Of a stretch of 64,000 bases of DNA, positions 18,388 through 56,247 are shown one piece after another. The stretch comes from Pecten maximus (taxonomy: Eukaryota): assembly GCF_902652985.1 (NCBI RefSeq), contig NC_047018.1, positions 42,904,001-42,968,000 on the forward strand. Reading direction: 5' to 3'. Made by a program: the position numbers and the translations under genes. Numbering within the stretch: position 1 is the first letter of the stretch; the number at the start of each line of letters is the position of its first letter. The notes under the pieces are model-generated. The model was not told the origin of the DNA and searched no databases. It saw only the letters and a program-made list of their open reading frames with translations.

Positions 18388-18979
18388 TTGTATGGTATGC
18401 CGACTTGGAACCTGGGCAGATCTTCGTCTTAATGCTCCAAATCCATTCTAAAAATAGATTAAATGAAAAAATTAACATGAACAAGATAAATTAGTTAAAA
18501 TAATAACTAGACCTTCTTTTAATATAACGTTAAATCATTGTCATTTTTGCAGTTTGTTATAACTAATTAAAACACCTCATGGATGTTGTACGTTGTAATA
18601 TTTGTTTCTCGATCTGGACCAACTGCGAGTCAGAATCACAGGTAGGCCTAGTAAGAATCAGAAATAACTTAGTCTAAGTCTTTGGTAAAGCAGTATACGA
18701 TAGAAATTATTCTCAATAATGTAAATTTAAATTCTGAACTGTTTACATAACTACGAATAAGACTTACCCGGTAATACTGTAAAGCGCAGTCTCCAAACAA
18801 CCGCAGTCGATGACACGTGTTGTGGACAGACACACGTTATACACTCCTACACGTGGTAAACTCGGCAAGGAGCTTCCCCAGACTCTCGTCCTCGCTCGAG
18901 ACTGCCTCAAACGAGAGTCTGGTCAGATTGCTATTTGAATTTTGTGACCGGTAGAGGGCGCTGAAAAATGTAAACAAAT

Positions 18980-21900
18980 ATGGCAACTCCAGTAAAAGAA
19001 ACTGACAGAATTCGCTTTCCAGACAGTGACAGGTGTGTTTCTTGTTGTTTAGAAAACAAACAAAGGTACTACATAATCCGAAAAGATAAGAACAAGGGTC
19101 CTGCTTTTGAAATTGTATGTTACTGTTACAAGAACAATCTCTGTATCGAAGAAAATGTTGGGACATATGTGTGTTCGCCTTGTTATAAACTGCTGCTACG
19201 AATAAAAGACATGGACTGCAGACGGTCACAATTATATGACAAAGTTATGATGTCGTCACAAACATTTATTAAAGTCATATCTGTGAAAAAACGAAGTATG
19301 GCCATAGGAACACCTGGAACACCAAGACAATCTAAGTTTCCTGACAAGAGAGCTACTCCAGATCAAGGTATTTTCAGCATTTAATTTTTATTCAATATTA
19401 TCATGCATGTAACAATCGGAACATATTCAGAAGAACCATTCTACCTTATATCCAGATTGTGTTTGATGTAAACGCATAATCTAAATAAATGATTGATAAC
19501 TGAAACAACTACTTAAATTACGTCACAAATGTCTGCATCATAACTTGTTTATTAGGATTAATCTATAGCGTAAAGGCCAGATGATAAAGGCATGGAAATC
19601 TTTTTTTTCTGCCTGACTTAGATATGAACACGTAAATATAGCATTTGTTAGTTATATTACAATAATATCAAAGTCATAAAATATGATATGATGAGTGTTA
19701 ACTCAGTAACATTATATGCTCAAAAGTTAATAATTAGTAATATAAAACTTGACATTATATATGTTTACAGTAGACAGGTGGTAGCTAGAGGTGATTATAA
19801 TCTAGGAAAGGATATATATCTTCATGCACTTACACTGGCAGATATCTGTTACATATATATTATTTTCGATATTCAATTATGTTTTTCAGGATCCCTAGAA
19901 AAGCAGTCTAGACAACAAACAGTAATTAGAAAGCCATCAACAAGATCATTGTTTTTAACTCCATCAAAAAAAGCCTCGAGCTCATTCACAGAGGATCTCG
20001 CTGTTCCATTTTCACCTGGGCCTCAAAGTAGTAACCAACAAAAGAGAATCAAATCTTCATCACTTTCGGTTAAGAAAACCCTGAAACATACAGTGTCATT
20101 TCGATCTTCAAAACTCTGTGAACAGATGCTTCCAATTGTAAAATCATTAGCAAATGGAAGCTTCAAAAAGGCTTTATCATTACTTGTAAATTCTTCAGAC
20201 CATGCAACCAAAGAAAATGCAAAGAAGGCAGTTAAGAAGTTAATTGAACAGGAATGCTGTGTCTTTTCAAAACAAACAAATGAATTTGAAGTACATTTAC
20301 AGAAACGGGAAACTAGAGATTTGGAAAACTTCAACATGAAAGAAATTCAAAAGGATTTTGAAAGTCATGCACCCATGTTATGGGCATGTGCAACCCAAGC
20401 AGCAACCTCTGGTTATAGCAAGACATTCGATCAGGTTAAGGTTTGTGCAGCTTTGTGTGTTCTTTTGCAGGGACGTTCAAAAATGCTTAACTCTCTTCAA
20501 CATGTTGTTGCCATAACAATGTACAACAACCAATTACAGAAAGATGGCTTTTCGGTGCTTGCAAAGCTGGGTTTTTCTGTAACCCATACAACCTTGAATG
20601 AAAAGTTGAACACAGCGAAAAAACTAAATGAGCAAGTAATGAAAACCTATCAGAGGAGGTTAGCAGACACTATTGCTGCTAAAAGTATTGTGGATAGGGT
20701 GAGCACTGAACACTCTTATGCAGGAGGATTAGATCAACCCTCAGTCATAGATGAACATTCCTATTCAACCATCTACCATTCAGAATTTCAACAACATGGT
20801 GAACCCCTAGGCTACAGATTTAACCTCGACAACCTGGACTTTCATATAAAAGTCAGGGAAATGACACAGGAACATCAAAATGTGTCGAGGCATTTTACTC
20901 AAATCATGTCTGTTGTAGATAGAGTGAGCTGTGAGGGTTTCACAGATGAGCCTGTCGGAAATTTGATGGAGGTTGAAAACAGCGAATTTCTTCCTACTGC
21001 TGAGGACAATTACACTCTTAGAAAAGACATGATACAGGTTGTATCCAACATTCTGATCGAACATCTGTCATCCTTCAAAATCTTTGAAAATATTTGTCCT
21101 AAACAATTCCAACATGCTTATTCAGCAGAAATGTCGAAGAAATCTATTGTGGTATATTATATATGTCACATTCAGAGTTGTTGTTAAAAGTTCATGTTTT
21201 TTTTTCTTCATTTTGGAAGATTTGAATTTAATTGGATGCAATACTTTGATTTGATGCTTTGATATCTTGAGTTTTTCATGCAATATATCTTTCAATCTTT
21301 GCAATGATATTTGATATTTGCTATAATTAATGTAAAATCTTTTACATGAAGGAAATGGTAACCATAATAATAAGATTTATAACTTGATATTCTTCCCAAA
21401 TATTTGTACAACTATCTAGAAATGAATGAGAAAAAATTTAACCTTTTAAATTTTGATAATTTATAATATATCAATTGCATCCTGTTACAATTCAATAGAA
21501 TAGATTGTTAATTTTATCAAAATTATTGAAAAGAAAATTATTGAAAAGAAATGCATAAATTTCCAGTTTTATGTGGCACTAGTGATTTTCTTAGCCTGGA
21601 TATATTCATTATATAGGGATCTGATCCTTATTAGTTACATTTCAACACAGAGGAATTTGTTCAAAATAAATTGAACTATCTGTGCCACATCAGAATTTGG
21701 AAATAAACCAATAATTCTCCAGGGAACTTAGGTCTGTATAGTGAGTCCTAAGTGTACCCATGGTAAAATAATTGGTTTGTAATTTATGACAATAATAATT
21801 ATAATTAATTATGGTTTAATTTTAAAGGTATGAAAATTGTATAAAATATGGACCAAATCATTTATGCATGCATGTCATTGCATGTCCATTATATTCATAG

Positions 21901-54929: not shown

Positions 54930-55013
54930 TCACAAAATTCAAATAGCAATCTGACCAGACTCTCGTTTGAGGCAGTCTCGAGCGAGGACGAGAGTCTGGG
55001 GAATGCGAGACTA
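54930..55013 (-). repeat. AcademH TIR (84 bp), transposase end of copy 2
   Basis: Ends ...GGGGAATGCGAGACTA. Confidence 0.95.
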
Positions 55014-56247
55014 AAAAGAGAGGTGAGTACAAAAGTCGACACGGCCATTTTATCCGGATTTTGTTTTTCCTGTGATATACATATTTATACATGGTGAGAT
55101 AATTATTTTATCCTCTGCTAATTTCAATTTTTTTAAATTTAATTTACAGTTCTTATTTTAGCGACGAAAAAAGTGTTATGATAACAAAAACCGAAAATAA
55201 AATAAAAGGTTTGATTTTTATAATAATTTCCGGACTACGTCGATTAAACTATTGGACTACGACCTCGGAAAAAATGTAAACAACGCGCTGCTGCGTTGCG
55301 GGTATTTTGATGCACAGAAGAGGATTTTTCGTCAGTTGCAGCCGGACTATTTTATAATTGGTAGGTTTTTATGTAAATACACATGTTTGTTCATCCAAAA
55401 TCTAGAATTCAGTCTTTTAATATCGATGTTAGGCGAGTTTGAAAACTGGCCGGCCCGGCCCGAAATCAAAAGCAGACGGGCAGACGACAGTCCTACCTGA
55501 CACGTTTAAATTCCCAATGTTAGCCCTTTCGCAACCAAATGTGACAAATACTTCAAAAATACTACAAAACACGTCTTCATTCCAACTTAATCGTCTTCGT
55601 GTTGATAGTTTTCCTCAAATGTCATGAATTGGATTATTTTTGCAGGCAAATCGCCTTGGTGGGCTTACTAAAGGCGAGATAGAGGAAGAGAATTGACCGG
55701 AATGTTCAATAAGTACTCGGTGATTTAAACTTGATAGGATTGTTTTTTATCAATTCTATCAATTCTTTATTAAGACCCTGCGTAAGGATAAACATGCTAA
55801 ATAAAGAGGATACAGAACAGTATTGATATATATTGTTTTTCATTTTACATGATAGAGTCTAGGTACCTTCAAGACGTGTTATATTAATTTATTAAGCATC
55901 AATGCATTGAAAATTATATAAGACTTATTCATAGTGAATTGATTGAAAACGACTCGTTCTCTAGTATTTTTTTCATGCACATGTCTGTGTCAATTACAAA
56001 AAGATAAAGGTCACATGTTACAGTGATTAGTGAAACATAAACTGTATGTTTGCCAGCGACCTAGCATCTTCATACCTTGAGATCATATTTAAAACAAAAT
56101 TCACACAATGATAAGGATGTTAATATCTCCAGACAAGATAAGTCTCAGGGTTTTTAATGATTCAGTTTGTTGGTTTGTACAGTATAGCTTTCCTAAATTA
56201 ACACATTATATTATTATAGGACAAACTCTATTTGACACCATCATATA

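What the first reader, a model, noticed from the sequence alone, without database searches (positions are those of the whole stretch)
18866..55022. Twin helicase-encoding AcademH transposons with reciprocally swapped TSDs around a 15-kb inversion
Seen: neither copy has matching flanks. The copy-1 left flank CAAGGAGC (18866-18873) is the reverse complement of the copy-2 left flank TGCTCCTTG (44492-44500), and the copy-1 right flank CTCTCTTTT (29405-29413) is the reverse complement of the copy-2 right flank AAAAGAGAG (55014-55022). Each TSD pairs one transposase end with one helicase end, so flipping 29405-44500 gives two normal 9-bp-TSD insertions. Established: this is the product of intramolecular replicative transposition in bacteria (IS26, Tn3, Mu), and also of crossover between inverted copies. 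Inference: since the element carries its own RecQ-like helicase, this could be a footprint of a replicative copy-in pathway in a eukaryotic DDE-type transposon. Local hopping plus ectopic recombination, or mis-orientation in assembly, give the same sequence and cannot be excluded here.
Basis: partly seen in the sequence, partly recalled or inferred. Interest (0 to 1): 0.9.

Follow-up and report, generated by a model that had tools for sequence, protein, structure and literature searches.

The report
Inversion between twin AcademH transposons
Two almost identical copies of a rare helicase-carrying DNA transposon sit 15 kb apart in opposite orientation, and the DNA between them is flipped relative to the original insertion sites. 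This is the classic footprint of a transposon-mediated inversion and does not show that the element copies itself replicatively.

Summary
Two inverted 10.5-kb copies (18874-29404 on +, 44501-55013 on -) carry reciprocally swapped flanks. I added an independent check. Both targets lie inside older repeats, a LINE 3' end and a second repeat family. In at least 14 and at least 10 paralogs of these repeats, the flanks now 25.6 kb apart are contiguous, with a single copy of the 8/9-bp target. Flipping 29405-44500 therefore restores two ordinary 9-bp-TSD insertions.

The element fits AcademH: a DUF6589 transposase with an RNase H-like fold, a RecQ-like helicase, 84-bp TIRs and 9-bp TSDs in the other copies. 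The two copies are each other's closest relatives, so one arose from the other by a local event.

The replicative reading is not specifically supported. Exchanged TSDs around an inversion are the known signature of recombination between inverted copies. They are also produced by hybrid-element (sister-chromatid) insertion by cut-and-paste transposases. The sequence cannot separate these routes.

My odds are: recombination after a local hop 0.40, hybrid-element insertion 0.25, assembly mis-orientation 0.20, replicative 0.08.

The parts
18874..29404 (+). AcademH copy 1 (10,531 bp). Its left TIR is truncated by 10 bp and its right TIR is intact.
44501..55013 (-). AcademH copy 2 (10,513 bp). Both 84-bp TIRs are intact. 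A 29-bp deletion lies at the helicase 3' end.
18866..18873 (+). Target duplicate X, left copy (CAAGGAGC, 8 of 9 bp), adjoining the truncated left end of copy 1
44492..44500 (-). Target duplicate X, second copy (reads CAAGGAGCA on the minus strand), adjoining the right (helicase) end of copy 2
29405..29413 (+). Target duplicate Y (CTCTCTTTT), adjoining the right (helicase) end of copy 1
55014..55022 (-). Target duplicate Y, second copy (AAAAGAGAG on the + strand), adjoining the left (transposase) end of copy 2
29405..44500 (.). The 15.1-kb segment that is inverted relative to both original targets. It consists of nested repeats, including an intact Ty3/gypsy-type LTR element.
14674..18873 (+). 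Young LINE (ORF2 with endonuclease, RT and zf-RVT) whose 3' UTR holds target X. This is the left part of the split LINE.
44305..44500 (-). The last ~190 bp of the same LINE, now inverted and 25.6 kb from the rest of it
29405..29623 (-). Left half of the second target repeat (family holding Y)
55014..55413 (+). Right half of the second target repeat (family holding Y)
19688..24825 (+). Transposase gene of copy 1. Exons lie at about 19688-21154, 22702-22833, 23091-23273 and 23788-24825. It matches DUF6589, and the DNLD, GGDQLT and E..N...K motifs are kept.
26489..29235 (-). RecQ-like SF2 helicase gene of copy 1. The DEAD exon is at 29235-28846 and the Helicase_C exon at 27667-26489, with a repeat-bearing intron between them.

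Best explanation
A young, probably still active AcademH transposon made two ordinary insertions 15 kb apart in opposite orientation, each with a 9-bp TSD. One went into the 3' UTR of a LINE (target CAAGGAGCA) and the other into a different repeat (target AAAAGAGAG). The two copies are parent and daughter of a local hop. Homologous recombination between the two 10.5-kb, more than 99.9% identical inverted copies then flipped the 15-kb segment between them. That flip exchanged one flank of each copy and produced the swapped TSDs. Separately, the left tip of copy 1 lost 10 bp of TIR and 1 bp of flank. Shown: the structure, the swapped TSDs, the original contiguity of both targets, the sister relationship of the copies, and the 9-bp TSD norm. 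Inferred: the order of events and recombination as the cause of the flip.
For: Swapped flanks. Paralogous uninterrupted targets for X (at least 14 loci with 8-bp overlap) and for Y (at least 10 loci with 9-bp overlap). The copies are sisters: they share 36 differences against the chromosome-8 copy, while 8 differences are private to one of them (2 in c1, 6 in c2) and one site differs in all three. With about 7 young loci in 918 Mb, chance proximity within 26 kb has p of about 1e-3. Normal transposition of this family gives self-matched 9-bp TSDs: 3 large copies, one 721-bp derivative, and 5 MITEs with perfect TSDs plus 4 with one mismatch. AcademH is reported to make 9-10-bp TSDs (PMC10045372). 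Exchanged TSDs on oppositely oriented copies at inversion breakpoints are the accepted signature of TE-mediated ectopic recombination (PMC2775673). Long, near-perfect inverted repeats that lie close together are good substrates for such recombination (general knowledge).
Against: There is no direct evidence for a two-copy, non-inverted intermediate. The copies are too alike to test for the chimerism that would prove a crossover. One-step routes give the same sequence. Orientation in the assembly could not be checked with spanning reads, because only short de Bruijn contigs were available and both flanks are multi-copy repeats.
Confidence: 0.4

Rival explanations
1. One-step hybrid-element (sister-chromatid) insertion by a cut-and-paste transposase. 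After replication of a single donor copy, the left end from one sister chromatid and the right end from the other are cut out together. They then integrate into a nearby site on the same chromatid. The result is an inversion flanked by two identical inverted copies with exchanged TSDs.
For: Delprat et al. state that this outcome is 'strikingly similar' to ectopic recombination, except that the copies are identical rather than chimeric (PMC2775673). Here the copies are near-identical sisters. There are signs of double-strand-break chemistry. Deletion derivatives show 6-bp microhomology (C1497) and 3-bp junction overlaps (chromosome-8 7-kb copy). TIR-only MITEs of 92-244 bp exist. Two independent ends are truncated at exactly TIR position 10|11. 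The closest solved folds are the cut-and-paste Hermes (Z 9.5) and P element (Z 9.2) transposases.
Against: Identity of the copies is also expected for a parent-daughter pair that later recombined, so it does not discriminate. No reciprocal excision product or footprint was seen. Hybrid-element insertion has never been shown for Academ elements.
Confidence: 0.25
2. Assembly mis-orientation. The real chromosome carries two normal insertions, each with its own TSD. The assembler threaded the unique 15-kb middle segment the wrong way between two 10.5-kb near-identical inverted repeats.
For: The repeats are 99.9% identical, too alike for noisy long reads to tell apart. Both outer flanks are themselves multi-copy repeats. 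At 9 positions in flank A, all laid contigs differ from the assembly, which shows that local sequence there is hard to assign. Both orientations would give identical junction sequences.
Against: The whole structure lies in one gap-free stretch; the only N run is at 11560-12059. The two copies keep distinct private variants along their length, which suggests that reads were partitioned. No alternative junction contigs exist in the assembly.
Confidence: 0.2
3. Intramolecular replicative (copy-in) transposition. The 3' ends of a single donor copy are nicked and joined to a nearby target on the same molecule. Replication through the element, perhaps aided by its RecQ-like helicase, then duplicates it and inverts the intervening segment.
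For: The product has exactly the structure known for IS26, Tn3 and Mu intramolecular inversion (general knowledge). The copies are sisters. The element carries a helicase of unknown role. No data here show excision.
Against: No feature here is specific to this route. Deletion derivatives, MITEs and end truncations fit double-strand breaks with gap repair. The replicative transposases Mu and TnsB are more distant in fold (Z about 5.5) than Hermes and the P element transposase. No eukaryotic DDE transposon is known to transpose replicatively (general knowledge). The junction at X is imprecise, although that may be a later change.
Confidence: 0.08

Closest known systems
Galileo-mediated inversions 2j, 2q7 and 2z3 in Drosophila buzzatii (PMC2775673)
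   Same: There are two copies of one DNA transposon in opposite orientation at the two breakpoints. The TSDs are exchanged. Each target is single-copy in the un-inverted arrangement.
   Different: For Galileo, chimeric copies proved a crossover. Here the copies are too alike to test this. The un-inverted state is inferred here from paralogous repeat copies, not from an allelic chromosome. The element belongs to another superfamily (Academ, not P). The inversion is only 15 kb and holds no evident host gene.
Hybrid element insertion (P element) and alternative or sister-chromatid transposition (Ac/Ds)
   Same: These routes predict an inversion flanked by two identical inverted copies with exchanged TSDs, arising from a single donor in one step near the donor.
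   Different: This has never been shown for Academ elements. No reciprocal product or genetic data are available here.
Intramolecular replicative transposition of IS26, Tn3 and Mu
   Same: The end product is the same: a duplicated element in inverted orientation, an inverted intervening segment, and both the old and new TSDs split.
   Different: Those are bacterial elements with a demonstrated nick-and-copy mechanism. Here the chemistry is unknown and the indirect signs favour double-strand breaks.
AcademH families described by Kojima 2020 (cited in PMC10045372 and PMC10799480)
   Same: The element has a transposase plus an SF2 (DEAD/Helicase_C) helicase, makes 9-bp TSDs, has TIRs, has an animal host, and is low in copy number.
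   Different: I had no reference Academ sequences, so transposase kinship rests on Pfam DUF6589 and on fold, not on a direct comparison. This family is very young, with copies 99.6-100% identical and intact reading frames.

Membership tests
AcademH transposon | Generates 9-10-bp target site duplications | tested here: met
   9-bp TSDs flank 3 large copies, one 721-bp derivative and 9 MITEs. The literature value comes from PMC10045372.
AcademH transposon | Encodes a helicase in addition to the transposase | tested here: met
   DEAD and Helicase_C exons lie on the strand opposite the transposase. The best solved relatives are BLM, RECQ1, WRN and RecQ.
AcademH transposon | Transposase belongs to the Academ clade of DDE transposases | tested here: inconclusive
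   The transposase matches Pfam DUF6589, which has 2213 relatives. A homolog model has an RNase H-like fold nearest to Hermes and the P element transposase. D, D and E motifs are present in the window exons. No reference Academ sequence was available for a direct comparison, and Kojima 2020 is not held.
AcademH transposon | Terminal inverted repeats | tested here: met
   Perfect 84-bp TIRs.
TE-mediated inversion by ectopic recombination | Two homologous copies in opposite orientation at the breakpoints, with exchanged TSDs | tested here: met
TE-mediated inversion by ectopic recombination | Single, uninterrupted target at each breakpoint in the un-inverted arrangement | tested here: met
   Shown in paralogous repeat copies, not in allelic chromosomes.
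TE-mediated inversion by ectopic recombination | Both copies chimeric, as evidence of a crossover | tested here: inconclusive
   All informative differences are private to one copy and none is shared with other family members. No test is possible on this basis.
Replicative intramolecular transposition | Donor never excised, with nick-and-copy chemistry and cointegrate-type intermediates | not testable with these tools
   This needs biochemical or population data. The indirect signs point the other way.
Hybrid element insertion | [quoted passage not shown] | tested here: met
   The copies are sisters and differ at about 8 private sites. This is also compatible with the rival explanations.

The most novel reading that the evidence does not exclude
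The inversion and the second copy arose together in a single transposition event of one AcademH donor. In the boldest version this was a replicative copy-in reaction using the element's own RecQ-like helicase, which would make AcademH the first eukaryotic DDE transposon known to transpose replicatively.
Probability: 0.08. Interest if true: 0.85.

Novelty: new member of a known kind. Interest (0 to 1): 0.4.

Why it matters
This is a clean, very recent example of a transposon-mediated inversion in a marine invertebrate genome. It involves a superfamily, Academ, whose mechanism has never been studied experimentally. It also points to a young AcademH family that looks autonomous: it has intact transposase and helicase frames, near-identical copies, and deletion derivatives and MITEs. 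That makes it a good candidate for a first biochemical study. Such a study could ask whether the ends are cut on both strands, where they are cut, and what the helicase does. The structure alone does not answer the replicative question. It does define exactly which haplotypes and which reads would answer it.

Tried and rejected
- Chance: rejected. The flank matches have a probability of about 4^-17, and there are independent paralogous empty sites.
- Composite transposon (two copies moving the 15-kb segment as a unit): rejected. Neither the outer pair nor the inner pair of flanks forms a TSD.
- Reads: only Logan contigs were available, and none spans a copy. The loose end after 18873 (ACTTGATT...) at first looked like an empty allele, including in a second species (X9). 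However, the flank is a multi-copy LINE, so these contigs cannot be assigned to this locus. I use them only as the lead that led. The contigs neither confirm nor refute the truncated left junction. No contig shows an intact left end at X.
- Polarising the c1/c2 differences to look for chimerism or pre-existing polymorphism: all differences are private, so this is uninformative.
- Segmental paralog at C4:43.02 Mb: it shares pieces of A and B in yet another order. These are repeat copies and say nothing about the ancestral orientation.
Only the chromosome-8 copy was compared in full. The unpaired ends on C1215 and C3006 could not be resolved.
- Foldseek against the PDB gave nothing significant. 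VIA-align was needed.
- Kojima 2020 is not in the held library.
Exons were searched separately, and a natural homolog (P0006) was folded instead.
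Full report
**What is there**

The window (C4:42904001-42968000 of a 918-Mb, 3,983-contig assembly) holds two copies of a 10.5-kb element in opposite orientation. From memory these figures fit a scallop genome, which I did not verify. 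Copy c1 lies at 18874-29404 (+) and copy c2 at 44501-55013 (-). Both right ends and the left end of c2 carry a perfect 84-bp TIR that starts TAGTCTCGCA. The left end of c1 lacks exactly these 10 bp.

Read in element orientation, c1 is CAAGGAGC[L..R]CTCTCTTTT and c2 is CTCTCTTTT[L..R]CAAGGAGCA. Two fixed-position matches of 8 and 9 nt are not chance.

The copies are not identical. They differ by four substitutions, a 29-bp deletion in c2, and four length or register differences in simple-sequence runs.

**Independent proof that the middle segment is inverted relative to both targets**

A loose end seen when contigs of public runs were laid on the left junction led me to test whether the flanks are themselves repeats. 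They are.

- The 4 kb to the left of c1 is a young LINE. Its 1,237-aa ORF has endonuclease, RT and zf-RVT domains.
- The last 600 bp of this flank have at least 12 full-length paralogs at 95-100% identity.
- The reverse complement of 44305-44500, the far end of the middle segment, matches the same loci. It starts 8 bp before the point where the first match ends. For example, C11:27509071-27509670 is followed by C11:27509663-27509854. The same holds on C9, C18, C8, C1, C10, C5 and others, at least 14 loci in all.

So in the LINE family the sequence runs ...CAAGGAGC-ACTTGATT... without interruption, and the LINE's last ~190 bp now lie inverted 25.6 kb away.

The second target behaves the same way. 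The reverse complement of 29405-29623 and the sequence 55014-55413 are contiguous, with a 9-bp overlap, in at least 10 copies of a second repeat family.

Flipping 29405-44500 therefore restores both targets and gives two ordinary insertions. This is shown by paralogs, not by an allelic chromosome.

**What the element is**

The plus-strand gene has four exons, at about 19688-21154, 22702-22833, 23091-23273 and 23788-24825. I mapped them with natural homologs. The gene matches Pfam DUF6589, and the family has 2,213 relatives in the protein library.

Instead I folded a natural 833-aa homolog, P0006 (pLDDT 82.8). A Foldseek search of the PDB gave nothing significant. An all-against-representatives structural search gave these best matches:

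- Hermes transposase (Z 9.5, 305 residues aligned)
- P element transposase (Z 9.2, 339 residues aligned)
- retroviral integrases (Z about 8)
- ISCth4, Mos1, Sleeping Beauty and Tn5 transposases (Z about 7)
- Mu transposase, TnsB and RAG1 (Z about 5.5)

This is an RNase H-like DDE fold with a large helical insertion. The window's exons keep the family's conserved DNLD, GGDQLT and E..N...K motifs.

The minus-strand gene has a DEAD exon and a Helicase_C exon. Its best solved relatives are BLM, RECQ1, WRN and RecQ.

Other copies in the genome have self-matched 9-bp TSDs:

- C8:23158752-23169281 (CCTGTCAAG)
- C8:363233-370255 (AGGGTTGAT)
- the pair of unplaced contigs C3752 and C1250 (CATATTCAC)
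- a 721-bp derivative on C1497 (ATGTGGTCC)
- nine MITEs of 92-244 bp, five with perfect TSDs and four with one mismatch

AcademH is reported to make 9-10-bp TSDs (PMC10045372). I file the element as AcademH with one reservation: I had no reference Academ transposase to compare it with.

**Relationship of the two copies**

Against the full chromosome-8 copy, c1 and c2 share 36 differences. Only 2 differences are private to c1 and 6 to c2, and one site differs in all three. They are each other's closest relatives.

With about seven young loci in 918 Mb, two of them falling within 26 kb by chance has p of about 1e-3. One copy is therefore the local offspring of the other.

Every informative c1/c2 difference is private to one copy. 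There is therefore no pre-existing polymorphism that could reveal a crossover point.

**Mechanism**

The structure is the established signature of a transposon-mediated inversion. Delprat et al. (PMC2775673) set out the alternatives. Ectopic recombination between two inverted insertions gives exchanged TSDs and chimeric copies. Hybrid-element insertion uses the two ends from sister chromatids of a single cut-and-paste donor. Its outcome is 'strikingly similar', with identical copies. An assembler that threads the 15-kb middle the wrong way between two 99.9% identical 10.5-kb repeats would also give it. All four junction sequences are the same in either orientation, so short reads and contigs cannot decide.

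Indirect evidence bears on the chemistry and favours double-strand breaks at the ends, rather than nick-and-copy:

- The family has internal-deletion derivatives whose junctions show short microhomology. This is 6 bp in the 721-bp element. The 7-kb copy has two 3-bp overlaps.
- It has many TIR-only MITEs.
- Its nearest solved folds belong to cut-and-paste enzymes.
- The left end of c1 and one end of an unrelated MITE (C8:3002812) are truncated at exactly the same nucleotide, between TIR positions 10 and 11. Internal duplicated units of another MITE share this boundary.

One speculative reading of the last point is that the non-transferred strand is cut 10 nt inside the end, as in the staggered cut made by the P element transposase. 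Loss of both overhangs followed by end joining would then give exactly the junction seen in c1 (10 bp of TIR and 1 bp of flank lost). None of this is proof.

**Odds**

- Local hop followed by recombination between the copies: 0.40
- One-step hybrid-element insertion by a cut-and-paste enzyme: 0.25
- Assembly mis-orientation: 0.20
- Replicative copy-in: 0.08
- Other: the remainder

Arguments for a correct assembly are that the whole structure lies in one gap-free stretch and that each copy keeps its own private variants. Against it, both outer flanks are multi-copy repeats, and the laid contigs differ from the assembly at nine flank positions in all runs.

**Verdict**

The replicative interpretation is possible but not favoured. 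This is a new member of a known kind, a TE-mediated inversion with exchanged TSDs, and to my knowledge the first described for an Academ element. Its main value is that it points to a young, apparently autonomous AcademH family suitable for mechanistic work.

Noticed in passing
window 18874; C8:3002812-3002842 (L027:1561-1600); C4:43500185-43500215 (L028): The left end of copy 1 and one end of an unrelated MITE are truncated at exactly the same nucleotide, between TIR positions 10 and 11. Internal duplicated units of a third element share this boundary. A genome-wide pattern search found no further cases. This may mark a break or cleavage point 10 nt inside the end, or a weak spot next to the TIR hairpin.
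   Followed up: partly
window 12794-18873 and 44305-44500: A young LINE with an intact 1,237-aa ORF2 (endonuclease, RT, zf-RVT). Paralogs are up to 100% identical over its 3' 600 bp. It is split by the AcademH insertion about 480 bp after the ORF stop.
   Followed up: partly
window 31539-38069: An intact Ty3/gypsy-type LTR retrotransposon with gag and with pol carrying protease, RT, RNase H, integrase and a chromodomain. Its 300-bp terminal direct repeats are identical. It is nested in another repeat inside the inverted segment, and a 98% identical copy lies at C7:18835977. I only observed it.
   Followed up: partly
window 24236 / 49642; C8 copy: One transposase codon differs in all three compared copies: Ser in c1, Tyr in c2, and a 1-bp deletion (frameshift) in the chromosome-8 copy. 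The 29-bp deletion in c2 replaces the last 5 residues of the helicase with a 16-residue tail.
   Followed up: partly
G000:C1215:35-9562 and G000:C3006:42831-43429: Two further young element ends sit on unplaced contigs with flanks that do not match each other (AACAAGCCA and TCGCGAACA). They could be incompletely assembled insertions or a second rearranged pair.
   Followed up: no
G000:C2112:180-288 (L018): A 109-bp TIR-only MITE with no TSD at all (flanks GTTATCGT.. and GTATGGAA..), the only such case among 10 MITEs checked.
   Followed up: no
window 27752-28266 (inside the helicase intron): A ~500-bp stretch of the element matches dozens of dispersed genomic loci at 70-82% identity. It is a repeat nested in, or captured by, the transposon.
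   Followed up: no
window 58284-59201 and 13107-13606: Two tandem arrays, one with a 154-bp unit (about 6 copies) and one with a 51-bp unit (about 9 copies).
   Followed up: no
window 16374-18873: At nine positions, the contigs of all three individuals of the species differ from the assembly. This is probably because the laid contigs come from more abundant LINE paralogs and not from this locus.
   Followed up: partly
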